This document shows positions 14,701-64,000 of a stretch of 64,000 nt of DNA, in pieces; position 1 is the first letter of the stretch; every line of letters starts with the position of its first letter. The stretch is from Mytilus trossulus (taxonomy: Eukaryota). The notes under the pieces are model-generated. The model made no database searches, was not told the DNA's origin, and was given only the letters and a program-made list of their open reading frames with translations. The DNA is taken from contig NC_086385.1 of assembly GCF_036588685.1 (NCBI RefSeq), forward strand, positions 45,717,216 to 45,781,215. Reading direction: 5' to 3'. The position numbers and the translations under genes are program-made.

Positions 14701-16705
14701 AGTCAACAACACTAGAACCATTATATTTTATACAAGTATATTTACCAAGAAGATCGCCAATTGTTCTACCATTCAAAATTCGTAGCCCATCTTCTTTACA
14801 GAGCTCTATTAATAATTTGCAACTCTTTTTTGGCCTTTTATGATCAAGACTATTTCTTGGTGTACCTATATCATATACATAGCTATCATCCTCAGCATGA
14901 GGATAGATAGATTCATCAGAGTATACAAAGTCTGGTGTTGTGCTAGTGTAGGCATTAAAATCGCCTTGAATCAATACTTCACCATATTGACTATAGTTTT
15001 CTATATTACAGAGTAATTTTGAATACATTTCTTCAATATCTTTTGGTTGCCCAGAAGAATTTTCTGGGGAAAAATAGATAAAAGCAAGATATATATCTTT
15101 TGGAAGATTAAAAAACTTATGGTTTAGCTTTACCCACTGGATATCACTATGTTCATTTGGAAGCTTAGTCAAACCTTTGATCAAAGAAAGTTTGGCATAT
15201 ATTGCAATTCCACCAGAATTACGCCTTGCTTTTTATGTTTAGATCGACTACTGTTGCAAATAAGTGCATAATCTGGTATATTCAAAGTAGTTCCACTGTC
15301 ACTCCATGTTTCAATTAAATTAAATAGATGCATATTAGATATAATATTCAAAAAAGCAGGGTCCTTAATTTTGTCTTGATTTAAGCCCTGGATATTCCAT
15401 AAACCAATTTTCAGGTTATTCGTGGTCATTGTTAAAGAATCAATGATGGTAAGATGACGGGAAGTTTTGTAATAAATTGGATTTCTTAAGGCATGATTGC
15501 ATGTGTTTAGATGTTGGTTTGGTTATATGTAAAGGATCTAAATGAAGATATTAAATACCTTAATGAATGTCCTATGGTATAGGTACCTTTTAATAATAGT
15601 ATAAGAAAAAAAAAAAAAAAAAAAAAAAAGTTAACAATTTACTTTAAAGGTGCATTAAGAAGTCAATTATTGACTTTTTTGGTGTAAAGAGGGATAACTC
15701 TAATTCATAAGTAAGCTTGAATAAAAAGATTGATAAAAAGATTGATAAAAAGATACATAAAAATAAAATGAAGATATAATAACTGTTGATGATGCACAGG
15801 TAATGACTAGAATCAATGTACACAGGATATATGTAAATGATATCAAGATACATAATGGTACAAATATAATGTTATATTGATATGAAACACAATTCATATT
15901 TTCAATGTAAAATGAATAACAACCAAAAAATAATAATAAACAAAGTAAAAAAAAACCAAACCAATATACAAAAAAAATAAAATAATACAGTACTGACAGT
16001 TAACAATGAGAATCAGAATGGTTCATTAATAAAGAAAATATTTATTAGAAGTCCATTCTCTGCCTAGCTGATGGCATGTTCCAAGGTCCAAAAAGCCAAG
16101 GGTTGAAGTATGGCATGTTCAAGTTGAAGGGTGGACAAGGTGGATTTCCTAACGGTTGTTGGTATTGATTATTGTTATAATTTGGGTTTTCAATTGGTGG
16201 TTGTTATTGACTATTTCCGAGCGATTGTTGGTATTGACTATTGTTATAATTTGGGTTTTCCTTTGGTGGTTTGTATTGACTTTTTCCAAGCGATTGTTGG
16301 TATTGACTATTGTTATAATTTGGGTTTTCAATTGGTGGTTGGTATTGACCATTGTTATTGTATGGATTCCTCAGTAGTGGTTGGCCTGTATTATTGTTAT
16401 AGTATGGATTTCTGTGCGGCGGTGAGTATTGATTGTTGTTATTAATGTCAGCCTTGTTTTGTCTGTAGTTCTTTGTTTCGCCGTGATACACACTAGGTTT
16501 GTTACTAGTCCTTGGTGGTGTGTTAGCTTGCGTGAATGGGATCTTCATCTGGCGCTTCAAAAATTTCACAATTGCAGGTATACCTCTGCTGTCATTGAGG
16601 TGTACATAGTCGAAGAACATATCGTCTGTGGGTATAAAACCTTTGAGTATGTTGAAAGATGGATAGTCATGAGCTACGGATATTATCCTGTCGTTTGCTT
16701 CATCA
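11772..16705 (-). mobile_element. Non-LTR retrotransposon (RTE-X/CR1-group-like), copy 1, truncated in ORF1
   Basis: APE endonuclease motifs (WNIQGL, ETW, GDFNA, SVVDY, SDH), RT motifs (FVDLRKAFDTV, GVKQ, FADD), C-terminal CCHC-type region, TAAGA/TGATA microsatellite tail at ~11772. Confidence 0.92.
11960..15429 (-). pseudogene. LINE ORF2 (endonuclease + reverse transcriptase), frameshifted, copy 1
   Basis: Split across ORFs 15181-15429, 13571-15184, 12943-13590, 12893-13078 and 12232-12903 in different frames; 3' end approximate. Confidence 0.9.
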
Positions 16706-16979
16706 GTCAGAGCTCTGACATAAACAAGTCAGAATAAACTGACTTCTATAAGTCAGATATAATTTGATGTAAGTGTTATCTCCCTTCTTGCACTTAACAG
16801 AATATGACTTGTACGGGTCAGTTTTTGTCAGACTTTAGTTTATCATAAAATGACTTAAGCAGGTCAGCTTTTGCACATTAAAATGTGACTTTATATCTCA
16901 ATATTTTAACAAGATTTATGCCCCTTTTAGATGCATTTTGACCTACAGAAGTCAATTTTGTTCTGACTTGAAGCAGTCA
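16706..16979. promoter_or_regulatory. Subterminal array of TGAC-N8-GTCA palindromes (putative transposase/accessory-protein binding sites) after a 14-bp terminal palindrome
   Basis: GTCAGAGCTCTGAC at 16706-16719; perfect TGAC-N8-GTCA at 16716, 16740, 16805, 16851, 16939, 16964. Confidence 0.75.
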
Positions 16980-17734
16980 ATACTACAACTTTAAAAATAT
17001 ACATTTATATATTAAATAAACCGTGATTTCTTGTATATTCACCATTTGTTTACTGAATATTGTAAAATAAATAAAGAAACAAACAAACAAACAACAGTTA
17101 AGAATAAAATGTTTATTCACTGACAAGAAATAACTGTACATTTAAAAACATGTAAATGAATATAAAAACATGTAAATGAATCTAAAAAAAATACATTTAA
17201 TTATAACCATATCTGTTAAAAGTTTTTGTATAAAAGAATGTGTAAAGTAAGTGTAACAACAGCTGTGCCAAAAGTGTACTTTAAATTATTTGATTACCAG
17301 TATTTAGGAACATGTTTCTTTTGTCTTAAATATGTGATACTTAAAAATACAAAGCAAAATTAAAAAGTAAAAACACAAAAATACTGAACTCCGAGAAATA
17401 ACAAATACTCGGAGAAGGTGGCTCGGGACCGAACAATAAACACTATATATAACAACCTAATTATCCATAACATTTGTACAATCTTATCAACAAACATCCT
17501 TACGTAAATTATAAAATGGTTATGCACTTATGTTAAATGTTTTGGTACCTTAATACATATTGATAGATTATTATTTCTATTATGTAACTGAATGTATATA
17601 AGCAGTTATCAAACACAATTTCATAAAAAGGTGTATTTTTGTTAAAAAATGAATTTAGTGTGGTATATTCTATATTTGAAAATAGCATTCACATAGTTAG
17701 GAAATCCATTAAACATACATTTACATCATCACAT

Positions 17735-19735
17735 AGTGAACAAAGAAAAATAAAACATTATTGGCAGTGAGTTATAAAGTCATATCAATAAGCACTTTTT
17801 TTAAAATGTTTCTGCACCCAACTTGGCAGTGTAATTTTACAGTACCTTATCTTGACACTATTACAAAATAAGGCAAAAGTAACTGAACCCTACTTGGCAG
17901 AGTTTGAGGTCATCTTATTTAGCACTGTGCCCATCTTGGCTTTCATCATAGATATTTTAAATCACAAAAGTTGCATATAAATTTGGTGACAGTCTTTTGG
18001 GGTATTGTACAACATGTTGAAGAGTGAACAAAGAAAAATAAAACATTATTGGCAGTGAGTTATAAAGTCATATCAATAAGCACTTTTTTAAAAATGTTTC
18101 TGCACCCAACTTGGCAGTGTAATTTTACAGTACCTTATCTTGACACTATTACAAAATAAGGCAAAAGTAACTGAACCTTACTTGGCAGAGTTTGAGGTCA
18201 TCTTATTTAGCACTGTACCCATCTTGGCTTTCATCATAGATATTTTTAAATCACAAAAGTTGCATATAAATTGGGTGACAGTCTTTTGGGGTATTGTACA
18301 ACATGTTGAAGAGTGAACAAAGAAAAATAAAACATTATTGGCAGTGAGTTATAAAGTCATATCAATAAGCACTTTTTTTAAAATGTTTCTGCACCCAACT
18401 TGGCAGTGTAATTTTACAGTACCTTATCTTGACACTATTACAAAATAAGGCAAAAGTAACTGAACCCTACTTGGCAGAGTTTGAGGTCATCTTATTTAGC
18501 ACTGTGCCCATCTTGGCTTTCATCATAGATATTTTAAATCACAAAAGTTGCATATAAATTTGGTGACAGTCTTTTGGGGTATTGTACAACATGTTGAAGA
18601 GTGAACAAAGAAAAATAAAACATTATTGGCAGTGAGTTATAAAGTCATATCAATAAGCACTTTTTTAAAAATGTTTCTGCACCCAACTTGGCAGTGTAAT
18701 TTTACAGTACCTTATCTTGACACTATTACAAAATAAGGCAAAAGTAACTGAACCCTACTTGGCAGAGTTTGAGGTCATCTTATTTAGCACTGTACCCATC
18801 TTGGCTTTCATCATAGATATTTTTAAATCACAAAAGTTGCATATAAATTGGGTGACAGTCTTTTGGGGTATTGTACAACATGTTGAAGAGTGAACAAAGA
18901 AAAATAAAACATTATTGGCAGTGAGTTATAAAGTCATATCAATAAGCACTTTTTTAAAAATGTTTCTGCACCCAACTTGGCAGTGTAATTTTACAGTACC
19001 TTATCTTGACACTATTACAAAATAAGGCAAAAGTAACTGAACCCTACTTGGCAGAGTTTGAGGTCATCTTATTTAGCACTGTACCCATCTTGGCTTTCAT
19101 CATAGATATTTTTAAATCACAAAAGTTGCATATAAATTGGGTGACAGTCTTTTGGGGTATTGTACAACATGTTGAAGAGTGAACAAAGAAAAATAAAACA
19201 TTATTGGCAGTGAGTTATAAAGTCATATCAATAAGCACTTTTTTAAAAATGTTTCTGCACCCAACTTGGCAGTGTAATTTTACAGTACCTTATCTTGACA
19301 CTATTACAAAATAAGGCAAAAGTAACTGAACCCTACTTGGCAGAGTTTGAGGTCATCTTATTTAGCACTGTACCCATCTTGGCTTTCATCATAGATATTT
19401 TTAAATCACAAAAGTTGCATATAAATTGGGTGACAGTCTTTTGGGGTATTGTACAACATGTTGAAGAGTGAACAAAGAAAAATAAAACATTATTGGCAGT
19501 GAGTTATAAAGTCATATCAATAAGCACTTTTTTAAAAATGTTTCTGCACCCAACTTGGCAGTGTAATTTTACAGTACCTTATCTTGACACTATTACAAAA
19601 TAAGGCAAAAGTAACTGAACCCTACTTGGCAGAGTTTGAGGTCATCTTATTTAGCACTGTACCCATCTTGGCTTTCATCATAGATATTTTTAAATCACAA
19701 AAGTTGCATATAAATTGGGTGAAAGTCTTTTGGGG
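17735..19735. repeat. Tandem satellite, 288/289-bp unit, ~6.9 copies
   Basis: Unit start agtgaacaaagaaaaataaaacattattggcag at 17735, 18023, 18312, 18600, 18889, 19178, 19467; units nearly identical. Confidence 0.98.
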
Positions 19736-19807
19736 GACTGAGGGACTGACAGACAGACAAATGTACAACGGTACACCATAATAGGTCCCCTTTTAAAAAA
19801 AACAAGC

Positions 19808-21122
19808 TTTTTCAAAAACAAAACTATAAAAAGCACCAATAAAGACTAGATCCAACTCTTTAAAACTTAACATATACATGATATATACAAAAACTAACAT
19901 ATTTACAAACAAAACAAAAACATTTAATTTGACTTGTCAAATATAGAAATGCATATTTGAAGGTGGAGGTATGGCAAGGTCATAAAAAAAAATATTCATT
20001 TCATTGTCATTACAACATAGAAAACACCTATGAAATTGACGAATAAAACCAAAACTACACATGTTTAGAACATGATAGTTTACCAAAACAACTTTACCAC
20101 AAAAATATCTATATTGTTATGGTTTTGGCTCTTAAATATCAAAGACACTATTTCTTAAGATCAACTAATTTTTTTTTTTAATAACCTCTATTTCAAAAAG
20201 TTTCAAGACGGACACCTTCCTATTCCTTCTTTACCAAACAAAAAACAAAAAAAGCATAATAACTTTGAAAAATACGAAAGATGCATTTTTTTTATTTTGA
20301 TAATTCCTGTTCCTTTTTTCAAATTAAAGAGTTAAAAAAGCCACATCATCATACCTTCTCCTTCCCAAAAACTAAACATAATATCAGAGTCAGAATACGA
20401 CATCTCATCACATTCAAAACACAAACTAAAACCAGAGGAGAAAAAAATTGATCATACATTTTTCAAAAACAAAACTATAAAAAGCACCAATAAAGACTAG
20501 ATCCAACTCTTTAAAACTTAACATATACATGATATATACAAAAAGTAACATATATACAAACAAAACAAAAACATTTAATTTGACTTGTCAAATATAGAAA
20601 TCCATATTTGAAGGTGGAGGTATGGCAAGGTCCTTCATTTATCAATGATATTACTTTTTCTATATACTTTATCTAGACACTATAAATTAAATAAAAATAT
20701 TCATTTCATTGTAATTATGACATAGAAAACACCTATGAAATTGACGAATAAAACCCAAACTACATATGTTTAGAACATAATATTTTACGAAAACAACTTT
20801 ACAACAAAATATCTACCGGTATATTGTTATGGTTTTGGCTCTTAAATATCAAAGACACTATTTCTTAAGATCAACTAATTTGGTTGTCTTTTTTTTTTAA
20901 TAAACTCTATTTCAAAAAGTTTCAAGACGGACACCTTCCTATTCTTTCTTAACCCAAAAAAAACAAGAAAGGGTATATAACTTTGAAAAATACGAAAGAT
21001 GTATTTTTTTTATTTTGATAATTCCTGTTCCTTTTTTCAAATTAAAGAGTTAAAAAAGCCACATCATCATACCTTCTCCTTCCCAAAAACTAAACATAAT
21101 ATCAGAGTCAGAATACGACATC
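19808..21122. repeat. Tandem duplication of ~650 bp
   Basis: ttttcaaaaacaaaactataaaaagcacc...gatcatacattttt at ~19808 and ~20460, with several indels. Confidence 0.92.
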
Positions 21123-21837
21123 TCATCACATTCAAAACACAAACTAAAACCAGAGGAGAAAAAAATTGATCATACATTTTTCTAAATATCAAAAGATAAA
21201 AAAAATCTTATGAAAATTTGGCACATATGCTAGCACCATGACAATACTTCACATCTTCCCAGGAAAAATAATGCACTCATTCAGACTAAGGCTATAATAA
21301 AAAAAAATCATTCTCATCCTGTTTTAGCCAAGTTTATAGTAAAACATTGGTTAGTTTTAATATCAATTTCATTTTCAGAATGAATCACACTTGGAAATTA
21401 ACAAAATAAAAAAAACAATAACTTTAAATGTCTCTTTAAAAATATAAGAAAAATAAAGGATTTTTTTCATTATAGCCTCAATTAATTCTAAGATTATAAA
21501 ATAAACATGATATATAAAGTAAGACATTTATAAAACATGTGAAAAGTAACTAGTAACCACTTTGTGATCAGTTCTGTAATTAAAACACTGTCAATTACTT
21601 CAATATGTTCAACTTGACCTAAAAATGACCTTGACCTTAAGGACAAACTTCCCAACCAAGAATCCACCCCACATAGAGCCTCAGGAAAAGTTGCACAACA
21701 TTCGATTACACTAGGTTTTGAAAAGAGATCTTAATTTCTTAATGTAATTTTGAATAAGTTATAATGAATAATTAATAAAATATTTGTCCAAATATAAAAT
21801 CATTTTTAATTTTCAGTCAGAATTATGAGTCACAAAT

Positions 21838-21979
21838 TGACCTCAACAAGTCTGTCATATTTTGACTTTGACAAGTCAGTATTGTACACATATTTTTTTC
21901 ATAATACACTATATGATGAGAAAATGTGTTTACAATATGGACTTGTCAGAGTCAGAATATGACCGACTTATTGAGGTCA
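21838..21979. promoter_or_regulatory. Internal cluster of TGAC-N8-GTCA-type palindromes
   Basis: Sites at 21838 (GTCT end), 21863 (perfect), 21939 (GGAC start), 21964 (CGAC start); two pairs each 25 bp apart. Confidence 0.6.
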
Positions 21980-22154
21980 ATTTGTGTTAAATAAAACTTG
22001 ATGAGGAAACTTAATTTTTCAGTTAATTATCACCTGAACTGTGACTGATAATCTTAAGTACATTTAAAAAAAAACATTTTCTTACTGGTATGTTTTATTC
22101 CGAGAGCCAGAAGGATGCAAATTTAAATGGAAATATTCAAATAAAAAATATAAG

Positions 22155-25100
22155 TTATTGAAAGTATTTTTTACAGTAATTTTCATATTTTTGAAGAACC
22201 TGTTCAAAATTGTTTATGCTCCAGACTCTTCCTGAAGAGTCTCGAGCATAAATGTCAATATCAGTTTCGAATATAAATTTTTGGTCAACTGTGTCTTGAT
22301 CTTCCTTTGAAGGCCACTTGAATGAATTTTTTGAGCTGGACTGCTCCATGCAGTTAACTTGACACATCAGACCGTCCTTTCCAATGATCTGTCCCAGAAA
22401 CATTTTGTCTGAATAAGCAACACCAACATATTGTCCAACCATATTTTTTTCACCATTATCTGAAAATTTAAAATGTAGTGTAAAGGAGTATGTTCGATAA
22501 GGTCCTAAAATGGCCCCCATTTTAAGGGTAAATTTCAAATTCTGATTTATCGACCAATATCATGATAAATTATAGCTAATACATTGACTAGCTAGGATAT
22601 AAACAATTTTGTTGAAAATTTTACGTTTCTGCGTTCATTATTACGTCACAAGTTTCATGTTTCTTATGTAGATGATGTGATTCTTGAGTTCCTAAATGAA
22701 AGTCTGGTGTCTTTTATATTTTCTTATAGTATTTTTTAAAAGAAAAGTATTTCATTGGCAGTTAAAATTTTGAAATCTTTTGTAATTTATTAATTTTACC
22801 TTCATTTTCTTCTGTCTTGTTTCCTTCTGTCTTTTTTTCTTCTACGCTAAAGGTCAAAAGACCTTCTGAATTATTCACCTGAAACAAAGGAAGAAGTTTA
22901 AAAAAATGAACACTGAAAAGCTATCATTTAATACACTTTCCAAAAAATAATTTTAACTTTGCTGGTCATGCTGGTAGGATAAATGAAAAATTTATATGAT
23001 TGTCATTCAACTTCAATGGACATTTGTCTCATTGGCAATGGCTCCAACATTACTTTTTCATATATTTAAAGAGGAAAAATATTCAATTTCATCTCCATTT
23101 TTATTAAATATTAAACAAAAGTTTCATAGGCCTTACCTGGAAAAGTAAAAGATCTTGTATCATTGGATCTGCCATCTCTTCTAAAAGTTGCTCTGTTTGA
23201 GAGACAGATAACAGGCTAAAAAAAATAAAAAATATATAATTGTTTAGTAGTTATCTCCTGCTTATTTCACATCTAGTATATGTAAACAAGTTTTCCATGA
23301 AATCTTGAGTCAAATTCGTAAAATATAACAAAACAAAATGTTGTCAAGAGACTCTTATTTGGCATTAAAATAAAAAGATCATATCATAGGGAACCATTGT
23401 ACTAAGTTTCAGGTAGACTGGACTTTAACTTAATTAAAAAACTACCTTGACCAAAAATTTAATCCAAAGCAGGATGGACGGACGGATGCACAGAAGCACA
23501 AACCAAAAGACATAATGCCCCTATCCAATTAAAAGTAGGGTATAAAAAAGGTTGTGATAGGACAGTTAATTGAAAAATGTACAATCTTCTTTAAAGGCAC
23601 AATTTTTTTTATGACTACGTTTGATTTCAATAATTTTGTATTTGCAGCCATATGGTAGGTATAAATAAAAATATCAATACTTGAGCACTAATCCAAAATA
23701 TATTTTGATTACAAACCTTTCCTTCTGGCTCTCTTCCTCACTGTCTTCTACACTGAAAAATTAAAATTTGCATAATTACTTTTTGAGGGGGCAGATGGTT
23801 TTTTTTTGTCCTTCTTGATCTTGGAATTTTGCTTACTGTGCTTTGTTATTTCATGGATTTATTGTCCATGAATTATGAAAAGTGCATTTACCCTGACACA
23901 TTTTTATTTCATTTTTATAATCGTCTCTTTGATTAAGGCTTTAAATTGTTGTTTTCCTGTGAACAGTGATGAATGTGTTAAAGTATCAGACTATATAAAC
24001 ATTCCTTACAATACTTTTAATATTAAGAACAATAAATAATTGGTAATTGCATTCTTGTTAAAAATTCAATCTGTCTCTCTCTTACCCATGGCATGTGAAG
24101 TTTATGTTATTTGCTAGAAACCAGTCAAAATTTCTGAAGGAGTATTTATTTATCATGGCAAAAATATAATGTCTTGCAAGACTTTTGTAGACGTGATAGA
24201 TTTTCTATTAATTCTTGGTTATTTTCAATTCAAAAGCATATACTTACATCTCCGAGGTATGAGAACAGGTTTTCTGCTTTTTTGTCACTGGCTCATCATC
24301 CTCATCACTCTGTTCATCAAACAAGTCAGACATCTTTTTTCTTTTCTGAGGGAGATTTGATGTTGTTTCTCTACCTCTACCTCTACCTCTAATGGCTGAT
24401 GACTTTCCTCTACCCTTTCCTTTACCTCTTACCCCTCCTCTGGCATGTCCGGTGATCTGATTACTAAAGAAAATTACCAAAATGATTGAAGGGTGTTAAT
24501 AGATAAGTGATTTTTACATTTTAACTTGTTAAACAAGTAGAAACCACAAATAAATGATGTTTCGATTAAAACAATAGTTTAAAATTACTGTAAATATAAA
24601 ATAGAAGATGTAGTGTGATTGTCCACAAAAGACCAAAATGACACAGACATAAACAACTGTAGATCACTGTAAGGCCTTCAACAATGAGCAAACCCTTTCT
24701 TTTTTTGAAGAAAAGTAATAAGAATAAATACGCTGCTGTAAATTGCCAGCAATTAAGTGTGCTGCTACATTTTTAAAACTCCTTGAAATTTATCTGTTAA
24801 AAGTTGTTTCATCGTTTGTATTGTATACCTTCTATCTTTTCTTGACTCGGCATACAGAGCCCTCTTTGCTGATCTTATATCAAAATTGCTGCTACTTGGG
24901 TCATAGCTGGTGCTTGGTCTGTTGGTGTTGCTTGATTCATCATGTTCATTGCTGGTACTTGGTCTGTTAGTGTTGCTGGGTTCATTGCTGGTACTTGGTC
25001 TGTTAGTGTTGCTGGGTTCACTGCTGGTGCCTGGTCTGTTGGTGTTACATGTGGATGTTGATGGTAGTCTGAAATAAGATGCACTGTTTATTAACAAAAG

Positions 25101-28100
25101 GGCATCACAATTTAAGTTTATAAAGGTCATTCGCATTTAGACTGGTCAAAATATAACTGTAAAAATACAAATAAAATGATACACATCCAGTGTGGAATTC
25201 TTAAATTGCTAACATGAGTATATTAATCATGTGTACATTGTTAATTAACAATTCAAACCATACCACAGCATTTTGCATAGATGTTAATGTAAAGCATTCA
25301 TTTCATATTAACGTTTAAAGTAACAATCATACTTTGGTGTTTTTTTGTTGTTTTGAACCTGGGGGTTTCACAATACCAGTTCCCATTCTTAATCTATTTA
25401 TATTAATAAAGTTAAATGTGGATATTACAACTTACACATTCACATCTGCTGGTGTCACATTAATCTCCATTTGCTCCAGCATTTCTTTCTGCTCCCTGGC
25501 CAAATTTCTCCCGCTGCCGACACCAAAGTTGAAAGGATCTTTCTCTGGTGTCAGCAGAATGACTTCTTGGTCCGGGGTCACCTCAGGCATAGTTGGCAGC
25601 TTCTTCCTATGGCTGTATGGTAGTTTGTCTGTAATGGGGAGGCCTTCCGAAAAACGTTTAATCATTTCCCCATATCCAAATGCTTTAATTACTTTACTCC
25701 CCTTCCTCCTAATGAGGAAGAGGGTATCAACGGGCTCATATACCTGTTCTCTTTCCAATTTGGTTGCAAATTTTTGTAAATTTTTGACAATTCTGCTTTT
25801 TGACTTTTGTAAGGCGTTAATTTTACAGTTTCTCTCCTGGTACTTGTTGTCATAATTTCTTTTCTCCCCTGGTTTTAGTTTCTCCTCTCTACTCTCTTCC
25901 TCCTCTCTACTCTCTATAACTGAAAAAAAAGTAAATATAAACAATTGAAATTACAAACTTACAAACATATACTGTAAAATCTAGGAATGAGGTTTAAGGA
26001 CTTACAATAATTTCAAAAAGAAAAAAAAACACATTTTTTTAATTCTGTTTGTTTATTTTATGTTATAGGTTAGTCATTTAAGGTGTTACCCAACACTGTC
26101 AGTAAAATTAAAATTTGACAAAGTATTTTCTTTGACCCTTTAACAAAAATTTCCAAATTTTGGTTATATTGCAGTTTGACAAACATCAATTTTGTTCATT
26201 TAAAAGCTTAATATTCCATTAAAACAACTTAATTAACGCATTTAGCTGACTTTACAGAGTTATCTCACTGTAGTGTTAGGTACCACCTTAAGGGATATGA
26301 CATGCACAGAGTAGAGTTAATTATATATTTGCATGCATTGGTGTTGATGAAAAATTGATTTTATGATTTTTGTTCATAAATTCAGATCAATTCAATCTTA
26401 TAATTCTGAGAGCTCAAATTGTATGCATACATGTACATGCTGTATGTATGTTAATAGTGGATGATTCAAATCAAATTCAAAGTCAGGTCTCTCCTCTCAA
26501 ACATATTAATTAATAGCAATATATTTAATCCTGAAGATCATAATAAATAAATTATAAATGTCTAGTAGAATAATTATTAACTTCATATCTCATTTCTCGT
26601 ATCTCATTTCTGTTTAACAGATGGTCTTATTTGTTCCATGAATTTCAATAGTTAAAAATATCCAGAATTCGATTTTACCTTGCTTTTATGGAAAATCTGC
26701 ATCTTCTTTCCATTATTATAATGGAAAGAAGGATCATCAGGCATATTAGTGCAATGCTGATTGCCACAAAACACATAAATTCCATGCTCATGCTTTCATC
26801 TATAATAAAACATTATAATAAATAATCTTAATAATTAGACATTGATGGCAATATATAAAATAAATTCATACAATGGTAAAATTTTAAAAGAATGTTTTTT
26901 TCACCACAAGTAAAATTTAAACCAGGCTTATAATTTATATTATGGCAGACGGGCACTATAAAAGACTCATCTGATAAAAGATACATGTAAATTCAATCAG
27001 TTACTGTATGTGACCTGATTAAACACCTCCTCCCTTATAAATCAACATTTCATTTTTATAGTTAAAGCTAGAAATAAAGAATCTTTGATTCATTTTACCA
27101 AACGTGTGCATATATTTTTTTCTGCCAAAAATTGTTTTAGTTTATTGTGAAATCTATAAAAAGACTCTGAAAGAACAAAAGTTAGAAAGTTAAAATTTAG
27201 CTTATACTCATAAAAAGGCTGAATTGAAAACTAGTAACACACAAACATAAAATAATGAACATCACATGCAATTGCATAACTTAACATGCTTAAGGGAACA
27301 TAACAATATATAATTTTCATTCTGACTTCCAAGGATTTTTTTTTTTAACTCAAACAAGTCAAATCTATCTATAAAGTATGACTTTATACCTTAACCCTTT
27401 CCTCGTGAATGATGCCTTTTGATGCCTTTGTAGTACCTCAGTTAAACCACTTTGACTATGAAATGTCTGCGTAAATTTTATATCCAATATGAAAAGGATA
27501 TTCATAAGAATATCTGACTTACATTTATTTGATGAAATTTTTGTTTTTCGCAATGCATTAATACTTTAAAGCATATTTTCAGTATCTTATTGAAAAATCC
27601 TAGGCAAATCAAGAATGCAAAAAGAAACGCATTGAGGAAAGGGTTAACATGCATAGATATTAATTTGTGTATATATATAACACATGTATCATGCACATAT
27701 ATACATAAGGTGTCAGCCCTGTATAACAAATGGTTATCAAATGTCACGCTGAAGCATCTGACAACTTTTTCACATGTTTAGATGTGTATAATGCATAAAG
27801 AGAATGCCTGTCATAAATTTTTAATGAGACCTTCCCTGAGATAACCATTGGTAATACAGGATTAATGCATATTATTCAGAACATACAATATATATAGTAT
27901 TTAATGGTACAAAACATGCTAAATTATAAATACTGGCAAACATGTATATAGATAAACTGACATACATGAGAATCATACATACATTTTGTAGATGAAAATG
28001 TATACATTTCTTGAGATATAACATGCATTAATAAAATCAAACATGCCTCCAAACATTTATCATTTTGTTTATCATTACTATATAATACAAGTATCCACAA

Positions 28101-31100
28101 ACAAGAGTCAGACATATTGAAAGCATAGAACCAAACATGCAATTTTTTCTAAATATACCTCTAAAAATGAAAATTAATCTCATTGTGTCTCATTGTCTTT
28201 ATTCAGATTTTCTAACACATCAGTAAGCTCCCTCAAGAAATGAACAAGTTTGGCCTTTCCCTTTGTTTTAACCTCCTTCTGATACAATTGTTTGTGGTAA
28301 TCAAATTGAAAAGGATCTTCAATCTTGTCCAAACATTTTTCAATCTCATACTGGAGTTGTTTGTTAGTCATGTTACTTGTGCTAAATAGCTTCTCTCGCT
28401 CTGACGGAGTAACTGGGACAGGATGACGGAAGTTGTAATGGTCTGTCTGAATTGGATGTCCTAAAAATTCTGTTTTCATAAGGTGAATTCTTTTTCGTAC
28501 TGATAGTTTTAAAAAATCCACTAGTCCTTCATCAAGAGCCATCCCTGAAATAGATACATGGTCACCTTTTTTCCCTAAGTAATCAGTTTTCCTGAGTAAG
28601 ATCCTATATGCAATTATACCATTTTCGATTCCCAGAGAACGACTGTTACCTTTATCAGATTTAATGTTAAAGGTTGACAAAGAATGGTCTTTGATGGTTT
28701 CTAGCAGCTTGTTATTACGGCAAACAGTTAACCAAATTTTGTCTGTAGGTACACCTTTGGGGATCCATGACTTCAACTGCTTGTTCTTTTCTTCTAAAAT
28801 GAAGTCGAAATCTTCACCCAGGGACTTATTTCCACTTGTTGTGATTGATGAATATTTGTCACTTAAACTTCTTACTTCTTCTGGCATCATAAGGTCTTGA
28901 ATGGTGTCAAAAATTTCTATAACTTGATATTTGGGATGTGATCTTCCATGAAACAGTTCTTTTGTCATGTATTTGGCACTCTTAAGGAGGTCAGAATTGT
29001 TTCTTCTTGTTGCCATTCTAAAATTTATTATACCTTGGGAAAATCTGCATACCTGGTCCATCATATATGTAAAATTTGAGTTTGATGGAACCCCATACTT
29101 CTCAGTGCTGTATTTCAGGAAACCTTTTGCAGTCGGGTGAACCTTTGACAACATACAGAGTCGAACAAATGGTAAAACCAACTCCTGTAATGTTCCCAGG
29201 TGAAAGATTAGTAGTAATCTCCATGTTTTGTGGTGATCTTTGCATGCCTTTGCAAATTGTTTGGCAGCATCAGACTCAAATCCCATTAGTTGACATAAGT
29301 GTTCCAAGGCAGGTGTCCAGTTTAATTCAAAGAAAGATTTCATAAGATTCATTTCATAGTGACCAGACCCTATCCTCAGATATAACCAATCAAATTCTAG
29401 CATGAATTTTCTCTCCATTTGGGGATGAAATTCCTTTGCATGACTATTATAAAGATCTGTTGACAAAAATGACTTTGCACACCCTTCAATGGCACAAACA
29501 ACAGCTTCCTCTTTCAATTTCTTTATGATAAGGTATGGTAACCCATCACAGCATACAAATGTCCAGTGGCGCTGGTTGCCACCATATCTGACAATGCCAT
29601 TTTCTTCCCCAATCTTTCTTAAAACTCTTGCAACAGTTATCATGCTGTTTGGGTTACAGAATACAGGATCACTAATAATAATTTCATGTCTTCCATCATG
29701 GTTAGACTTAACATGGTTGAATTGGGTGAACTCGCTATGCACCTCTGTGATCTCTGACTTATCGTCATTTTCATCTTCCTCAAAAATAATTAGGTAGCAG
29801 GTGTCTTGGTCTTTTACAAATGAGTCATTGGTACAATCTTTCTTTTTATTCTTGGCTGATTTCAATCCATCTTTTCTACTGCAACTTGTACAAATTAGTT
29901 TGCGCTTACCATTCAATGCTCCACAGTGTTCACATTTAATATAGTTTTCATCCTGCACATCCTTTTTAACCTGATCATCAATAAAATCTTCAAAATTTCT
30001 CTCAGTTTGCTTCTGCTCCTTCGACACAGTGTCAATGGCATGGTCAATAAAATAGTACAACTGTTCGTAATGATCTGTTTCCATTTTTGAATATCTTTCT
30101 GTGTCCTGATCAATCATTTCATTGATAAGAGATTGAAGTTTTGAAGTTTGTGTAGTATCATTCTCATTGACATTTTCAGCTATATCATCTTTTTCCATCT
30201 TGGGTAACTGTAACTTTTTTTCAGGTTTCAAGTCTGCTTTAGTTTGTAAACTTTCAGGAGATTGCAATTCCATAAAGGCTTTGTTAGTAATTATGGATAT
30301 TGCAATTTTGTTTTTTGGCTTTATTGACCATGTTTTTCCTATTACTTGTTCGTTGTCAAACACATTCATCAGATCACATGAAGGTAATTCTGCGGGGTGG
30401 CTACTTTGCTCCTTAACCCAATTAGTGACAGTCTTGTAATGACCTGCTGGATTGGTATTTCCAAGTAAATCCACAACTAACCTGCTCCCAGTTAATGTAT
30501 ATGCAGTTAGATTCAGCAAAAAAGAAAGAGGTGAAATTAAACTTCTATTGCATACACTGTAAGATTGTTCTACTGCTCTACAAATTGGCAAGATGTCACC
30601 CGGTCTTTCTTTCAGCTTATGGAGAGAGATGTCAAGGTTACCAAGTCCCATTATGTAACCTATTAAGGGTTCATATCTGTTGTGGATCCATTTTAAAACA
30701 TCAAAATTTGCCACGGCATGGGGGTCCTTGTAAACATTTGAAAAGTTACTTGAATCCTCAGATATAGGTTTATGCTGCTTTTCCCAATACAGTTGCATAA
30801 CAGAGATTCTTCTTTCAGAGATAAAATGTTCAAAAATTCATTAAAAAAAACCTGTTTTTGGTTATCTTCCATCTTTAACAATGCATCTTTCATGTATTCT
30901 ATCAAACTGTTTAACTGTGAATATTCAGTAGCTAAGGGTGTAGTACTTTTTTGACTTTGGTCGTCCTCAAAGTTACTTTTAAATTCAGTATTCATGGGTG
31001 GGTATGTACTCTGAGAAGCATCATCATCATCATTGGTCCTCTTTCTCTTTTTAGGCCTCCCCCGAACTTGATCAGTTTTAGAGCACACTTCACAACCTAT

Positions 31101-32146
31101 GGTATGAGGTGGGAAATAAACCTTTGGCTTGGTCAATTTCAGTTCATTGGAGTTTGACAAGCTCTCCCCTTTTGTTTCCCTATATCTATATAATAACCTT
31201 GAGTGCCTAAGGCAAACAAATGGAGGGTATGTTTCGTCATTTTCCTCTTTAACATCAATTCCGTATATGGCAATTATTTCGGAAGCGTAAAGAACTTTTT
31301 GGTACTTTTTCTTAGAATCTCTAATAAATTCATTACAAAGGCGACATACAGTTTGTAGCTTTGATATGTGTTCCCGGCAATCAGAGATTTCACTCATGAT
31401 GAAGTAAGTTGTAACATTTATGATCTTTTCGATTGTATCAAGAGGAGGATAAAAACAAAAGAAAGCAAGGTTTTAACCATCAGCTTTTCTCTGAAAATAA
31501 AGGCCATGAAACTTGTACATGTGTTCATTTGGTGTACAAATTATGTAGCTACAATATATAATCTCAAGGCATACTTGTTTGCTAGTTGGGTATAAGAAAA
31601 AAAAATTGAACCAGACAATATGCAATGAAGTACATCATAGAGATCAGCTCAATTGCTGAACATCAATGAATTCTACAATAATATATCCTTGAGTCTTGCC
31701 ATTAAAAATGATCAAAAATTAAATCCTTTAAAAAGATCATAGAGAACATGTTTACTAAGTTTGAAGTTTATTGGACTTCATAAAGACAACCTTGACCAAA
31801 ATTTAACCCAATACAGGAACAGATGAAAGAATGAACTAACTGAGAGGTGGGTGCATTGACTGCAAAACTTAATAAAAAGCTAATGCAATTAAAATACATA
31901 CATGACAGCTGATACATGATTCTTAATTACAATCTTAAATGTCATAAGACAAATCAATTAACCAGAACAAGTCCTAATTTTTTTACTTAGTCAAAAGTTA
32001 GAATAAATAATTTGACTTGATCTTTCAAAATTCTTTAAATACTATTGATGATCAGTGATTGAGAACAATAACCATATATCACTATAAACTGAAAAATGAA
32101 CTTTTCACTTACCATGTTGATCGTCACTACTGCTGTTTCCAGACAT
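22155..32146 (-). CDS. 8-exon accessory gene, 490 aa: basic N-terminal region, Ser/Thr/Asn repeat, RG-rich tract, acidic linker, C-terminal Tudor/SH3-like barrel
   Basis: Exons 32146-32113, 25919-25436, 25068-24829, 24463-24248, 23752-23717, 23215-23137, 22878-22800, 22459-22155. All introns GT-AG; phases 1,2,2,2,2,0,1 all match; 1473 nt with no internal stop (MSGNSSSDDQHVIESREEE...YENYCKKYFQ). AATAAA at 22094-22099 (minus strand). The short first exon is the least certain. Confidence 0.82.
24900..25048 (-). repeat. Coding minisatellite, 36-bp unit (NTNRPSTSNEPS) x~4
   Basis: Repeated peptide in ORF 24765-25136, within exon 3 of the accessory gene. Confidence 0.85.
28180..30798 (-). CDS. Putative DDE transposase core (Academ/DUF6589-like), 872-aa ORF
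   Basis: Intronless ORF. Motif order VFDNEQ ... VCCDGLPY ... IGSGHYEMN ... GEDFDFILEEKNK, plus a CxxC-x11-CxxC ribbon and a C2H2-like finger (CAIEGC...H...H). Family recalled from motif pattern, not searched. Confidence 0.7.
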   Translation of the reverse strand: MQLYWEKQHKPISEDSSNFSNVYKDPHAVANFDVLKWIHNRYEPLIGYIMGLGNLDISLHKLKERPGDILPICRAVEQSYSVCNRSLISPLSFLLNLTAYTLTGSRLVVDLLGNTNPAGHYKTVTNWVKEQSSHPAELPSCDLMNVFDNEQVIGKTWSIKPKNKIAISIITNKAFMELQSPESLQTKADLKPEKKLQLPKMEKDDIAENVNENDTTQTSKLQSLINEMIDQDTERYSKMETDHYEQLYYFIDHAIDTVSKEQKQTERNFEDFIDDQVKKDVQDENYIKCEHCGALNGKRKLICTSCSRKDGLKSAKNKKKDCTNDSFVKDQDTCYLIIFEEDENDDKSEITEVHSEFTQFNHVKSNHDGRHEIIISDPVFCNPNSMITVARVLRKIGEENGIVRYGGNQRHWTFVCCDGLPYLIIKKLKEEAVVCAIEGCAKSFLSTDLYNSHAKEFHPQMERKFMLEFDWLYLRIGSGHYEMNLMKSFFELNWTPALEHLCQLMGFESDAAKQFAKACKDHHKTWRLLLIFHLGTLQELVLPFVRLCMLSKVHPTAKGFLKYSTEKYGVPSNSNFTYMMDQVCRFSQGIINFRMATRRNNSDLLKSAKYMTKELFHGRSHPKYQVIEIFDTIQDLMMPEEVRSLSDKYSSITTSGNKSLGEDFDFILEEKNKQLKSWIPKGVPTDKIWLTVCRNNKLLETIKDHSLSTFNIKSDKGNSRSLGIENGIIAYRILLRKTDYLGKKGDHVSISGMALDEGLVDFLKLSVRKRIHLMKTEFLGHPIQTDHYNFRHPVPVTPSEREKLFSTSNMTNKQLQYEIEKCLDKIEDPFQFDYHKQLYQKEVKTKGKAKLVHFLRELTDVLENLNKDNETQ
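30693..31397 (-). CDS. N-terminal part of the same transposase: RAG1 N-terminal/Chapaev-like Zn-binding domain plus AT-hook/NLS
   Basis: H-x7-CRLC...YGIDV...YPPFVCLRH...FPPHTIGCEVC...RGRPKKRKR parallels RAG1 CRIC...FRIDV...HPTEFCHNC...WHPHTPSCDIC. Overlaps the 872-aa ORF; one added A in the run at 30779-30782 fuses them. Confidence 0.75.
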   Translation of the reverse strand: MSEISDCREHISKLQTVCRLCNEFIRDSKKKYQKVLYASEIIAIYGIDVKEENDETYPPFVCLRHSRLLYRYRETKGESLSNSNELKLTKPKVYFPPHTIGCEVCSKTDQVRGRPKKRKRTNDDDDASQSTYPPMNTEFKSNFEDDQSQKSTTPLATEYSQLNSLIEYMKDALLKMEDNQKQVFFNEFLNILSLKEESLLCNCIGKSSINLYLRIQVTFQMFTRTPMPWQILMF

Positions 32147-32504
32147 GTTTGATTTTTCTGAGAAAAAAAATGAGAGAAATTGTAACATATAAATAAATAA
32201 CCATTCGACTTAAAATTATTTATAAAAAAAATGTTAAATATAAAAAAACAATGGCAGATTCAGAAAAAAAGGGGGGTCTTAGTGGAAGATTTAGATCTGT
32301 ATTTCTTGACTTTTCTTTTCTTCTAAGTACACATAAATATTATGGTTTAAAAAAAATATTTTAGCAACCATTTGACCCAATTTTTTCTCAATACATTTGT
32401 TTGTACTTCTAAAATGATCAACTACAAAATGTAGCAGTGGCAGATTCTGAAAGGGGCTTCCAAAGAAGAAAAATAGATTTTATTTGAAACTTTGTTCTGC
32501 AAAC

Positions 32505-32546
32505 TGACTTAAACAAGTCAAATCATGTTCTGACTTTACAAAGTCA
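32505..32546. promoter_or_regulatory. Pair of TGAC-N8-GTCA palindromes near the right breakpoint, upstream of both genes
   Basis: TGACttaaacaaGTCA at 32505 and TGACtttacaaaGTCA at 32531. Confidence 0.65.
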
Positions 32547-32687
32547 GTAATTAACTAAATTTATTGAGATGGTCAGGCATTGTAAAATGATATTAATGAA
32601 TGTATTGAAAAGGTTATTTTAAGACACCGGAAATACATGTAAGATCCTGTAAAAATAAATAACCATTTGACTTTAAATTATTTATAA

Positions 32688-35600: not shown

Positions 35601-37782
35601 TCCCATACAAATTTACCTGGGAGTGGTTTTAAATATGCTTGTTGGGTTTTAGTATTGTCATAAAAAGATGTTAACAAGCTACAGCTTATTGCACAATGAT
35701 CTGATAATGTTGTAAAGTCGTGCACAGTAAAACTATTTATGGCATAAACATGTAATAAATTTGCAGATGCAACTGCATAGTCAACAACACTAGAACCATT
35801 ATATTTTATACAAGTATATTTACCAAGAAGATCGCCAATTGTTCTACCATTCAAAATTCGTAGCCCATCTTCTTTACAGAGCTCTATTAATAATTTGCAA
35901 CTCTTTTTTGGCCTTTTATGATCAAGACTATTTCTTGGTGTACCTATATCATATACATAGCTATCATCCTCAGCATGAGGATAGATAGATTCATCAGAGT
36001 ATACAAAGTCTGGTGTTGTGCTAGTGTAGGCATTAAAATCGCCTTGAATCAATACTTCACCATATTGACTATAGTTTTCTATATTACAGAGTAATTTTGA
36101 ATACATTTCTTCAATATCTTTTGGTTGCCCAGAAGAATTTTCTGGGGAAAAATAGATAAAAGCAAGATATATATCTTTTGGAAGATTAAAAAACTTATGG
36201 TTTAGCTTTACCCACTGGATATCACTATGTTCATTTGGAAGCTTAGTCAAACCTTTGATCAAAGAAAGTTTGGCATATATTGCAATTCCACCAGAATTAC
36301 GCCTTGCTTTTTATGTTTAGATCGACTACTGTTGCAAATAAGTGCATAATCTGGTATATTCAAAGTAGTTCCACTGTCACTCCATGTTTCAATTAAATTA
36401 AATAGATGCATATTAGATATAATATTCAAAAAAGCAGGGTCCTTAATTTTGTCTTGATTTAAGCCCTGGATATTCCATAAACCAATTTTCAGGTTATTCG
36501 TGGTCATTGTTAAAGAATCAATGATGGTAAGATGACGGGAAGTTTTGTAATAAATTGGATTTCTTAAGGCATGATTGCATGTGTTTAGATGTTGGTTTGG
36601 TTATATGTAAAGGATCTAAATGAAGATATTAAATACCTTAATGAATGTCCTATGGTATAGGTACCTTTTAATAATAGTATAAGAAAAAAAAAAAAAAAAA
36701 AAAAAAGTTAACAATTTACTTTAAAGGTGCATTAAGAAGTCAATTATTGACTTTTTTGGTGTAAAGAGGGATAACTCTAATTCATAAGTAAGCTTGAATA
36801 AAAAGATTGATAAAAAGATTGATAAAAAGATACATAAAAATAAAATGAAGATATAATAACTGTTGATGATGCACAGGTAATGACTAGAATCAATGTACAC
36901 AGGATATATGTAAATGATATCAAGATACATAATGGTACCTATATAATGTTATATTGATATGAAACACAATTCATATTTTCAATGTAAAATGAATAACAAC
37001 CAAAAAATAATAATAAACAAAGTAAAAAAAAACCAAACCAATATACAAAAAAAATAAAATAATACAGTACTGACAGTTAACAATGAGAATCAGAATGGTT
37101 CATTAATAAAGAAAATATTTATTAGAAGTCCATTCTCTGCCTAGCTGATGGCATGTTCCAAGGTCCAAAAAGCCAAGGGTTGAAGTATGGCATGTTCAAG
37201 TTGAAGGGTGGACAAGGTGGATTTCCTAACGGTTGTTGGTATTGATTATTGTTATAATTTGGGTTTTCAATTGGTGGTTGTTATTGACTATTTCCGAGCG
37301 ATTGTTGGTATTGACTATTGTTATAATTTGGGTTTTCCTTTGGTGGTTTGTATTGACTTTTTCCAAGCGATTGTTGGTATTGACTATTGTTATAATTTGG
37401 GTTTTCAATTGGTGGTTGGTATTGACCATTGTTATTGTATGGATTCCTCAGTAGTGGTTGGCCTGTATTATTGTTATAGTATGGATTTCTGTGCGGCGGT
37501 GAGTATTGATTGTTGTTATTAATGTCAGCCTTGTTTTGTCTGTAGTTCTTTGTTTCGCCGTGATACACACTAGGTTTGTTACTAGTCCTTGGTGGTGTGT
37601 TAGCTTGCGTGAATGGGATCTTCATCTGGCGCTTCAAAAATTTCACAATTGCAGGTATACCTCTGCTGTCATTGAGGTGTACATAGTCGAAGAACATATC
37701 GTCTGTGGGTATAAAACCTTTGAGTATGTTGAAAGATGGATAGTCATGAGCTACGGATATTATCCTGTCGTTTGCTTCATCA
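32688..37782 (+). repeat. 5.1-kb direct repeat, copy 2
   Basis: Near-identical to 11610-16705; continues uninterrupted into the rest of LINE ORF1. Confidence 0.97.
33040..36507 (-). pseudogene. LINE ORF2 (endonuclease + reverse transcriptase), frameshifted, copy 2
   Basis: Same fragment pattern as copy 1 (36259-36507, 34649-36262, 34021-34668, 33971-34156, 33310-33981). Confidence 0.9.
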
Positions 37783-63968: not shown

Positions 63969-64000
63969 TTTGATACACAAAATATATTGCATTGATCATA

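What the first reader, a model, noticed from the sequence alone, without database searches (positions are those of the whole stretch)
16704..32687. Candidate undescribed large two-gene DNA transposon system
Seen: a 16-kb block that cuts a LINE at a sharp junction. It carries a long intronless transposase-like gene, an intact 8-exon second gene, clustered palindromic sites and an internal satellite. Known: En/Spm (CACTA) uses a multi-exon DNA-binding gene (TnpA) with the transposase ORFs in its first intron, plus repeated subterminal binding sites; Academ elements carry XPG or helicase partners. Inference: this element combines an Academ-like catalytic core, a RAG1-N-like finger and an En/Spm-like layout, with no XPG, helicase or RAG2 gene visible. 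I do not recognise this combination as a named family. The truncated right part could have held more genes.
Basis: partly seen in the sequence, partly recalled or inferred. Interest (0 to 1): 0.9.

Follow-up and report, generated by a model that had tools for sequence, protein, structure and literature searches.

The report
Truncated RAG1-finger two-gene mussel transposon
The block is a real but right-truncated, frameshifted copy of a recently mobile cut-and-paste DNA transposon of a Mytilus mussel, whose transposase joins a RAG1-type N-terminal zinc domain to an Academ-like (DUF6589-type) catalytic core and which carries a conserved helper gene.

Summary
The observation largely holds. At 16704 a 43-bp terminal inverted repeat (CAGTCAGAGCTCTGAC...) cuts a LINE. 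A 7.2-kb non-coding relative with the same ends has at least 25 young copies; all four whose right ends I fetched have 5-bp target duplications.

The right edge at 32687 is not a transposon end. It is the breakpoint of a 21,078-bp tandem duplication (11610-32687). In the second unit the LINE reads TTCAT-CATG-TTCAT at the same site, where an intact LINE copy has one TTCAT. That is an excision footprint.

The transposase (28180-31397, minus strand) is about 1,100 aa and is split here by a 1-base homopolymer difference. It has a RAG1 N-terminal-like domain and a DDE core related to PF20231. In this genome PF20231 genes sit beside helicase genes, the AcademH layout. The core resembles P-element and hAT transposases more than RAG1.

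A second-gene exon (25436-25919) lies downstream of the transposase in 20 further diverged loci. The 8-exon model and the En/Spm-like splice over the transposase are plausible but unproven, because no RNA data were available.

N-RAG-TP (Aplysia, 2008) is a named precedent. This scan already reported the same transposase type elsewhere in this genome. Repbase and Dfam could not be searched.

The parts
11610..16703 (-). First copy of the duplicated flank. It comprises 161 bp of unique DNA (11610-11770) and the LINE from its 3' end (about 11771) up to the insertion site.
   Evidence: 99.88% identical to 32688-37782. At least 38 other LINE copies begin at about 11771, so 11610-11770 is not LINE sequence.
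16699..16703 (.). Target-site copy TTCAT abutting the left inverted repeat
   Evidence: Read directly from the sequence. The same pentamer flanks the footprint in the second unit.
16704..16746 (+). Left terminal inverted repeat, starting CAGTCAGAGCTCTGAC
   Evidence: All 14 fetched copies of the 7.2-kb non-coding family start with the same 16 bases. In that family the two ends match over 43 bp with 1 mismatch.
16704..16992 (+). Left subterminal region with six TGACTT-N4-AAGTCA-type palindromes
   Evidence: It is 89-90% identical to the left end of at least 25 non-coding relatives.
17735..19735 (.). Internal 289-bp satellite, 6.9 copies
   Evidence: The C1 copy holds fewer units.
21028..21271 (+). 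Internal stretch shared (about 75-80% identity) with the non-coding relatives. It marks the left border of the coding block that they lack.
24248..24463 (-). Arginine/glycine-rich exon of the second gene
   Evidence: Strong acceptor and donor signals. It joins exon 2 in phase, as in a Mytilus galloprovincialis gene model (P0046). An RG-rich exon also follows exon 2 in the 49%-identity subfamily.
25436..25919 (-). Conserved exon 2 of the second (helper) gene
   Evidence: Homologous open frames lie 0.9-2.5 kb downstream of the transposase, on the same strand, in 20 further loci. Acceptor is T8CAG and donor is GT|GTAAGT.
28180..30798 (-). Transposase catalytic part (872 aa). The DDE residues are D148, D418 and E669, and a C2H2 finger follows D418.
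   Evidence: The DDE residues are invariant in 25 relatives. The AF2 model has pLDDT 85.8. RNase H-like fold with an insertion domain: P element Z 9.8, Hermes 8.5, RAG1 5.4.
30693..31397 (-). Transposase N-terminal part with a RAG1 N-terminal-like zinc domain. The reading frame is broken at about 30778.
   Evidence: PF12560 at E 1.3e-7, above its cut-off. Alignment to a RAG1 N-terminal structure. The break is a T4 versus T5 run compared with the C1 copy.
32113..32146 (-). Putative exon 1 of the second gene (ATG ... G|GTAAGT), upstream of the transposase
   Evidence: It is the only ATG-started, phase-compatible exon with a strong donor in 25926-32687 on this strand. There is no RNA evidence.
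32435..32687 (+). Repeat-bearing stretch shared with the non-coding relatives, with two palindromes. It ends at the duplication junction 32687|32688.
32688..37782 (-). Second copy of the duplicated flank (unique 161 bp plus LINE). Here the LINE continues to about 38311.
37776..37789 (.). Excision footprint TTCAT-CATG-TTCAT at the same LINE position where the first unit carries the element
   Evidence: The intact LINE copy on C2 reads a single TTCAT at this site.

Best explanation
The block is the left 16 kb of an autonomous cut-and-paste DNA transposon of a Mytilus genome.

The element encodes two things on the minus strand:
- A transposase of about 1,100 aa. It has a RAG1 N-terminal-like zinc domain, then a DDE RNase H-like core with an inserted helical domain and a C2H2 finger. 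The core is distantly related to PF20231/Academ-type transposases.
- Downstream, a spliced helper gene of unknown fold.

The ends are a 43-bp inverted repeat (5'-CAG...CTG-3') followed by arrays of TGACTT-N4-AAGTCA palindromes. I infer these are protein-binding sites. Integration duplicates 5 bp.

History of this locus, inferred from the sequence in three steps:
1. The element inserted into a LINE at TTCAT.
2. A 21,078-bp segment (11610-32687: flank, LINE part and most of the element) was duplicated in tandem.
3. The complete element of the second unit was excised. It left TTCAT-CA-TG-TTCAT. The first unit's copy lacks a right end and is stuck.

The footprint keeps two bases from each transposon end. 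This suggests staggered cuts two bases inside the element, as in Tc1/mariner, and not hairpins on the flanking DNA as in hAT/Transib/RAG. That rests on a single event.

The helper gene may be made from the same promoter by splicing exon 1 (upstream of the transposase) to exon 2 (downstream of it), as in En/Spm. This is inferred from splice signals only.
For: Transposon ends and mobility:
- The inverted repeat and 5-bp duplications (GATAT, ATTAA, TAATG, AATGT) are seen in four complete copies of a 7.2-kb non-coding family. Its left 290 bp is 89-90% identical to 16704-16992.
- Copies of that family are 97-99% alike.
- A second copy of window 16717-31315 sits on C1 at 99.6% identity. It is truncated at both ends.

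Locus history:
- The LINE is cut at 16703|16704, while the C2 copy of the LINE runs on.
- Footprint: the second unit reads TTCATCATGTTCAT where the C2 copy reads TTCAT.
- The duplicated unit starts 161 bp outside the LINE, in DNA that occurs only twice in the genome. A second LINE retrotransposition therefore does not explain it.
- The two units differ at 6 of 5,096 positions.

Transposase:
- PF12560 on the N-terminal part.
- D148, D418 and E669 are invariant across 25 relatives.
- PF20231 matches 9 of 25 relatives at E up to 0.01 and 11 of 25 at E up to 10, best E 6.7e-11.
- At least 20 of 103 PF20231 matches in this genome lie 2.5-10 kb from a Helicase_C match on the opposite strand, against about 0.2 expected by chance.
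- The fold is RNase H-like with an insertion domain. The P element is the best match (Z 9.8, 355 residues aligned). RAG1 scores Z 5.4.

Helper gene:
- A homologue of exon 2 lies downstream of the transposase on the same strand in 20 other loci, at 27-54% identity and mostly with open frames.
- Exon 2 has acceptor and donor signals in two subfamilies.
- There is only one phase-compatible upstream ATG exon with a strong donor.
Against: - No right inverted repeat is present, so the full length and right-hand content of this family are unknown.
- The window's own 872-aa frame does not reach PF20231 on its own. The link runs through its relatives.
- The equation PF20231 = Academ is indirect. It rests on helicase neighbours and on rust-fungus enrichment reported in PMC5751038 and in bioRxiv 10.1101/2025.10.24.684071.
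- The 5-bp duplication fits neither AcademX (3-4 bp) nor AcademH (9-10 bp) (PMC10045372).
- There is only one footprint, and only one other LINE copy covers that site.
- No reads could be laid, so the tandem duplication has not been checked against raw data and no splice is shown.
- The helper protein gave no family hit, no Atlas hit and no usable model.
- No intact autonomous copy of this exact subfamily exists in the assembly.
Confidence: 0.8

Rival explanations
1. The element belongs to the Chapaev/Chapaev3-Transib (CMCT) group, whose transposases are the ones known to carry the RAG1 N-terminal 'Chapa' domain. On this view its core is a diverged RAG1-like core and not an Academ-like one.
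For: - The termini are 5'-CA...TG-3' and the target duplication is 5 bp. Both fit the CMCT description in PMC12730594 (CA..TG termini, 2-5 bp).
- A C-x(2-4)-C motif follows the second D, and an H-x3-H motif (H617, H621) precedes the E.
- PMC4411706 states that the Chapa domain is found only in the Chapaev, Chapaev3 and TransibSU groups and in RAG1.
Against: - The family profile matches RAG1 only at residues 101-269 and never in the core.
- Structurally, RAG1 scores Z 5.4 against 9.8 for the P element and 8.5 for Hermes.
- The Cys pair forms a local C2H2 finger with H453 and H458. This differs from the split Zn site of RAG1.
- The Pfam hits are PF20231 only, with no CACTA or RAG1 families.
Confidence: 0.1
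2. The LINE-block-LINE arrangement is an assembly artefact, with two haplotypes (element-bearing and excised) joined in series. On this view it is not a real tandem duplication.
For: - Mussel genomes are highly heterozygous, and false haplotypic duplications are common in such assemblies (general knowledge).
- One unit carries the element and the other carries the footprint, which is what two alleles would look like.
Against: - There are no N runs in the window.
- The units differ at only 0.12% over 5.1 kb. This is low for two mussel haplotypes.
- The junction at 32687|32688 shows no long overlap that could mislead an assembler.
- Even if this rival were true, the footprint and the transposon remain real.
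Confidence: 0.12
3. The inverted repeat at 16704 belongs to a non-coding shell element. On this view the transposase and helper genes are an unrelated element nested inside that shell.
For: - The 7.2-kb relatives share only 16704-16992, 21028-21271 and 32435-32560 with the block. They lack everything between 21272 and 32434.
Against: - No inverted repeats or target duplications bracket 21272-32434.
- The C1 copy is colinear across both borders.
- The pattern is the usual one for internal-deletion derivatives of an autonomous element.
Confidence: 0.05

Closest known systems
N-RAG-TP transposon of Aplysia californica (Panchin and Moroz 2008)
   Same: A mollusc mobile element whose protein resembles the N-terminal, non-core part of RAG1 (as summarised in PMC8355894, PMC8374863 and PMC2996935). 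Here the matching evidence is PF12560 and RAG1 residues 101-269.
   Different: The original paper was not held in the library. Its catalytic part, ends, target duplication and any second gene could therefore not be compared. Later reviews describe it as consisting only of RAG1-N-like sequence, whereas this protein has a full DDE core.
Academ superfamily (AcademH with helicase, AcademX with XPG)
   Same: Relatives of this transposase match PF20231. In this genome PF20231 marks transposase genes that pair with helicase genes, as AcademH does.
   Different: There is no helicase or XPG partner. The target duplication is 5 bp and not 3-4 or 9-10 bp (PMC10045372). There is a RAG1-type N-terminal domain and a different partner gene.
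En/Spm (CACTA)
   Same: Subterminal arrays of short binding-site-like repeats. Possibly one transcription unit whose first intron holds the transposase frame.
   Different: The termini are CAGTC and not CACTA. The target duplication is 5 bp and not 3 bp. The transposase is unrelated. The splice is unproven.
Chapaev/Chapaev3/TransibSU/RAG1
   Same: They carry the same RAG1 N-terminal ('Chapa') zinc domain. They have CA..TG termini. Transib and RAG also make 5-bp duplications (PMC4411706, PMC12730594).
   Different: The catalytic core shows no sequence match to RAG1 and only a weak structural one. The footprint does not fit hairpin formation on the flanks.
Drosophila P element transposase (nearest solved structure)
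   Same: An RNase H-like DDE fold interrupted by a large inserted domain. Z 9.6-9.8 with about 355 residues aligned.
   Different: About 10% sequence identity and rmsd about 7 A. There is no THAP domain and no GTP-binding signature was seen. The similarity is at the level of fold class only.

Membership tests
Academ superfamily | Transposase core homologous to Academ transposases | tested here: inconclusive
   PF20231 matches 9 of 25 relatives at E up to 0.01 and 11 of 25 at E up to 10, best E 6.7e-11. The window protein itself does not match. PF20231 genes pair with helicase genes in at least 20 loci of this genome. No Repbase Academ sequences were available.
Academ superfamily | Target duplication of 3-4 bp (AcademX) or 9-10 bp (AcademH) | tested here: not met
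   5 bp in four complete non-coding relatives and in the footprint. The reference lengths are from PMC10045372.
Academ superfamily | Partner XPG nuclease or helicase | tested here: not met
   No such Pfam hit in the block's frames. No Helicase_C or XPG_I match in the window or at the listed family loci.
N-RAG-TP | Mollusc transposon protein similar to the RAG1 N-terminal region | tested here: met
   PF12560 at E 1.3e-7. Family profile versus RAG1 residues 101-269 at E 2e-11. The host is Mytilus.
N-RAG-TP | Same catalytic part, termini and target duplication as the Aplysia element | not testable with these tools
CMCT clade (EnSpm, Mirage, Chapaev, Transib) | 5'-CA..TG-3' termini and a 2-5 bp target duplication | tested here: met
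   Termini are CAG...CTG and the duplication is 5 bp. The criterion is from PMC12730594.
CMCT clade (EnSpm, Mirage, Chapaev, Transib) | RAG1/Transib-like core with C(2)C and H(3-4)H motifs forming the split zinc site | tested here: not met
   No core match to RAG1 by profile. RAG1 scores Z 5.4, below the P element and Hermes. The Cys pair belongs to a local C2H2 finger.
En/Spm (CACTA) | CACTA termini and a 3-bp target duplication | tested here: not met
   Termini are CAGTC and the duplication is 5 bp.
En/Spm (CACTA) | Two products from one transcription unit by alternative splicing | not testable with these tools
Only splice-signal logic is available.

The most novel reading that the evidence does not exclude
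These elements may be a third, so far uncharacterised lineage of Academ-related transposons (the 'N-RAG-TP type').
- It would have its own helper protein in place of a helicase or XPG, a 5-bp target duplication, and Tc1-like staggered excision.
- It would use an En/Spm-like single transcription unit.
- Its RAG1-type N-terminal zinc domain sits on a non-Transib core.
- If so, that module has moved between unrelated transposase superfamilies, and the RAG1 N-terminal region need not have come from a Transib/Chapaev ancestor.
Probability: 0.35. Interest if true: 0.7.

Novelty: new variant of a known kind. Interest (0 to 1): 0.55.

Why it matters
- The origin of the non-core N-terminal region of RAG1 is still argued from a single 2008 report.
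- This genome holds a large, recently active mollusc family that carries that domain on a core closer to Academ, P and hAT enzymes than to RAG1.
- The family has defined ends, a defined target duplication, a natural excision footprint and abundant non-coding passengers. That makes direct transposition assays practical.
- The conserved orphan helper gene adds another example of a two-protein eukaryotic cut-and-paste system.
- As a single locus this copy is a dead remnant. The value lies in the family and in the locus history, which documents very recent excision.

Tried and rejected
Searches that gave nothing useful:
- Foldseek of the transposase model against the PDB gave nothing significant.
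- Pfam at E up to 10 showed no other transposase family.
- The helper gene gave no Pfam hit, no Atlas hit, and an AF2 model of pLDDT 52.7 that I did not search with.
- An XPG search of the genome found only three host-like hits. It therefore cannot link PF20231 to AcademX.

Readings considered and rejected:
- I first read the two LINE copies as independent insertions. I rejected this because the duplicated unit includes 161 bp of unique flank.
- A 3'-transduced retrocopy was rejected because the second unit carries the footprint.
- P-nucleotide (hairpin) origin of CATG was rejected, because the flank TTCAT would give AT/AA and not CA/TG.
- A nested-element reading was rejected because no inverted repeats flank the coding block.

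Full-length relatives and their right ends could therefore not be fetched.
- The Panchin and Moroz paper and the AcademH paper were not held.

Full report
**What the window is.** The window is AT-rich (about 31% GC) and lies on contig C13 of a 1.3-Gb assembly. The closest protein relatives are from Mytilus species. One hit, named as Mytilus trossulus, sits on a contig whose length equals that of C3 of this assembly. The host is therefore a Mytilus mussel.

**The edges of the block.**
- A self-comparison shows that 11610-16705 and 32688-37782 are direct copies, 99.88% identical over 5,096 bp. They differ at six positions.
- Both copies carry a minus-strand LINE with endonuclease and reverse-transcriptase frames.
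- The LINE does not end at 16705/37782. A 97% identical copy on C2 continues to the equivalent of about 38311.
- At least 38 other LINE copies begin at about 11771. The duplicated unit begins at 11610, so 161 bp of DNA that occurs only twice in the genome is duplicated as well.
- This excludes a second retrotransposition. It shows that 11610-32687 (21,078 bp) is a tandem segmental duplication and that 32687|32688 is its junction.

**The left end is a transposon terminus.**
- The first 287 bp of the block match at least 25 loci at 89-90% identity.
- Fetching 14 of these loci showed a 7.2-kb family whose copies are 97-99% alike. It has no frame of 100 aa or more and no transposase similarity.
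- All 14 copies start with CAGTCAGAGCTCTGAC. The two ends of a complete copy match as inverted repeats over 43 bp with one mismatch.
- The four copies whose right ends I fetched are flanked by 5-bp duplications: GATAT, ATTAA, TAATG and AATGT.
- The family is packed with TGAC-N8-GTCA palindromes, 31 in 7 kb. The window has nine against 0.78 expected, clustered at 16716-16979 and 32505-32546.
- The non-coding relatives share only 16704-16992, 21028-21271 and 32435-32560 with the block. This is the usual pattern for internal-deletion derivatives of an autonomous element.
- No inverted repeats bracket the coding part, and no right terminus exists in the window.

**The excision footprint.**
- In the first unit the junction reads ...GCTTCAT|CAGTCAG...
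- At the same LINE position the second unit reads GCTTCAT-CATG-TTCAT-CAATAG. The uninterrupted C2 copy reads GCTTCATCAATAG.
- The extra nine bases are exactly a second TTCAT plus CA and TG, the outermost two bases of each transposon end.
- The simplest history is insertion at TTCAT, then tandem duplication of flank plus most of the element, then excision of the complete copy from the second unit. The first unit's copy lacks a right end and remains stuck.
- The units differ by only 0.12%, so the excision was recent.
- Retention of CA/TG does not fit palindromic additions from hairpinned flanks, which would give AT/AA here. It fits cuts staggered two bases into the element, as in Tc1/mariner. 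This mechanistic point rests on one event and is inference.
A haplotype mis-join is a minor rival. It would not affect the footprint.

**The transposase.**
- On the minus strand, 30693-31397 (234 aa) and 28180-30798 (872 aa) overlap.
- A second copy of window 16717-31315 lies on C1 at 99.6% identity. It lacks 13 bp of the left repeat and the first codons of the gene. There the frame is continuous (1,057 aa open).
- The window differs from that copy by one base in a T4/T5 run at about 30778. This copy is therefore frameshifted, or the base was miscalled.
- The N-terminal part matches PF12560 above its cut-off. It aligns with RAG1's CRxC ... IDVK ... HP..FC ... PHT..C..C motifs.
- A profile of 25 relatives matches RAG1 residues 101-269 at E 2e-11 and nothing in the RAG1 core.
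- In that alignment D148 (FDNEQ), D418 (CCDGLPY) and E669 (DFILEE) are invariant. A C2H2 finger follows D418.
- The AF2 model is confident, with pLDDT 85.8. Foldseek found nothing.
- Full alignment against PDB representatives gives an RNase H-like fold spanning residues about 139-708. Scores are P element transposase Z 9.6-9.8 (about 355 residues aligned), Hermes 8.5, ISCth4 8.4, integrase cores 8-9 and RAG1 only 5.4. The core is not RAG1-like.

**Which superfamily.**
- PF20231 (DUF6589) matches 9 of 25 relatives at E up to 0.01 and 11 at E up to 10, best E 6.7e-11. It is also the family named by the protein-language-model neighbours. The window protein itself stays below threshold.
- I tested what PF20231 stands for by searching it in this genome. 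There are 103 matches, none at our loci.
- At least 20 of these lie 2.5-10 kb from a Helicase_C match on the opposite strand. About 0.2 such pairs are expected by chance. This is the AcademH architecture.
- Published notes agree with this reading. Academ had no Pfam model in 2017 and is most abundant in rust fungi (PMC5751038). DUF6589 is reported as enriched in rusts (bioRxiv 10.1101/2025.10.24.684071).
- I therefore read the core as a distant Academ relative. It fails two Academ criteria: there is no helicase or XPG partner, and the duplication is 5 bp and not 3-4 or 9-10 bp (PMC10045372).
- The CMCT alternative (Chapaev/Transib) shares CA..TG ends, a short duplication and the 'Chapa' domain (PMC4411706, PMC12730594). 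It fails on the core.
- The family is large. A profile search found 5,273 representatives at E up to 0.001. This genome has more than 58 matches in several subfamilies with open 1087-1142-aa frames.

**The second gene.**
- The 170-aa frame at 25432-25944 has homologues 0.9-2.5 kb downstream of the transposase, on the same strand, in 20 further loci. These span subfamilies whose transposases are only 37-66% identical to this one. The frames are mostly open.
- In both subfamilies I could read, the frame is bounded by a good acceptor and a donor that overlaps its stop codon. An arginine/glycine-rich exon follows it.
- It is therefore an internal exon of a spliced, conserved helper gene.
- In this subfamily exon 2 has no start codon near its 5' end.
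- On this strand between 25926 and 32687, only one ATG-started frame ends in a GTRAGT donor in the required phase. It is 32146 (or 32188) to 32113, upstream of the transposase.
- A strict splice search gives a 5-exon product of about 310 aa. A Mytilus galloprovincialis gene model joins exon 2 directly to the RG-rich exon.
- The proposed last exon has relatives inside unrelated 1229-1252-aa frames. The 8-exon model is therefore one of several possibilities.
- The joined model was used only in a script to check reading phases.
- The helper protein has no recognisable family or fold.

**Comparison with what is known.**
- N-RAG-TP of Aplysia (2008) is the named precedent for a mollusc transposon with a RAG1-N-like protein. 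I could not read the paper. Reviews describe it as made only of RAG1-N-like sequence (PMC8355894).
- PMC4411706 states that this domain occurs in no transposons outside the Chapaev/Transib groups. A full DDE core of Academ-like type attached to it is at odds with that statement.
- This scan has already reported the same transposase type on other DNA of this genome (s1-820510, s1-829896, s1-820499). The family itself is therefore not a first sighting here.
- New in this window are the locus history with a footprint, the genome-wide conservation of the helper exon, and the helicase-neighbour test for PF20231.

**Verdict.** This is a real transposon remnant of an interesting, recently active family. 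I rate the novelty as a new variant of a known kind, subject to a Repbase/Dfam check that I could not run.

Noticed in passing
window 11771-16703 and 32849-38311; L036: A LINE family of about 5.6 kb (endonuclease plus RT). At least 38 copies are 93-97% alike at the 3' end, but only about four cover the 5' end. Its 5' frame holds a 69-bp tandem repeat (16144-16353).
   Followed up: partly
window 20423-20452 and 21141-21170 versus 25852-25881: Two inverted 30-bp fragments (87% complementary) of the helper gene's exon 2 lie in the internal roughly 700-bp duplicated stretch (19808-21202). They could pair with the exon in a read-through RNA.
   Followed up: no
window 22158-22538: A 127-aa domain (GQYVGVAYSD...FKWP...) has relatives at the end of 1229-1252-aa open frames on C9, C75, C1 and C12. 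It may be a module shared with another mobile element.
   Followed up: partly
L019 (C1:28212000-28221999), about 17 kb from the C1 copy: A member of a second subfamily (transposase 49% identical, 1087 aa open, with its own helper exon) lies next to the C1 copy. It has two 99-100% identical twins on C11 and C14.
   Followed up: partly
G000 contig C5, about 43-56 Mb and 69-88 Mb: Dozens of degraded fragments of both the transposase and the helper exon cluster on one chromosome. This looks like a transposon graveyard.
   Followed up: no
window 39671-41001, 57000-57700, 62800-63970: A satellite of about 500 bp is repeated at several places in the window and near the C1 copy.
   Followed up: no
window 7835-8129 and 45808-46102: A 295-bp inverted pair, 97% complementary, with arms 37.7 kb apart and enclosing the whole duplicated region.
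   Followed up: no
G000 C14:48545013, C13:51389895, C7:38715296: PF20231 matches lie inside very long open frames (1816-2171 aa). These may be fused transposase-plus-partner proteins of Academ type.
   Followed up: no
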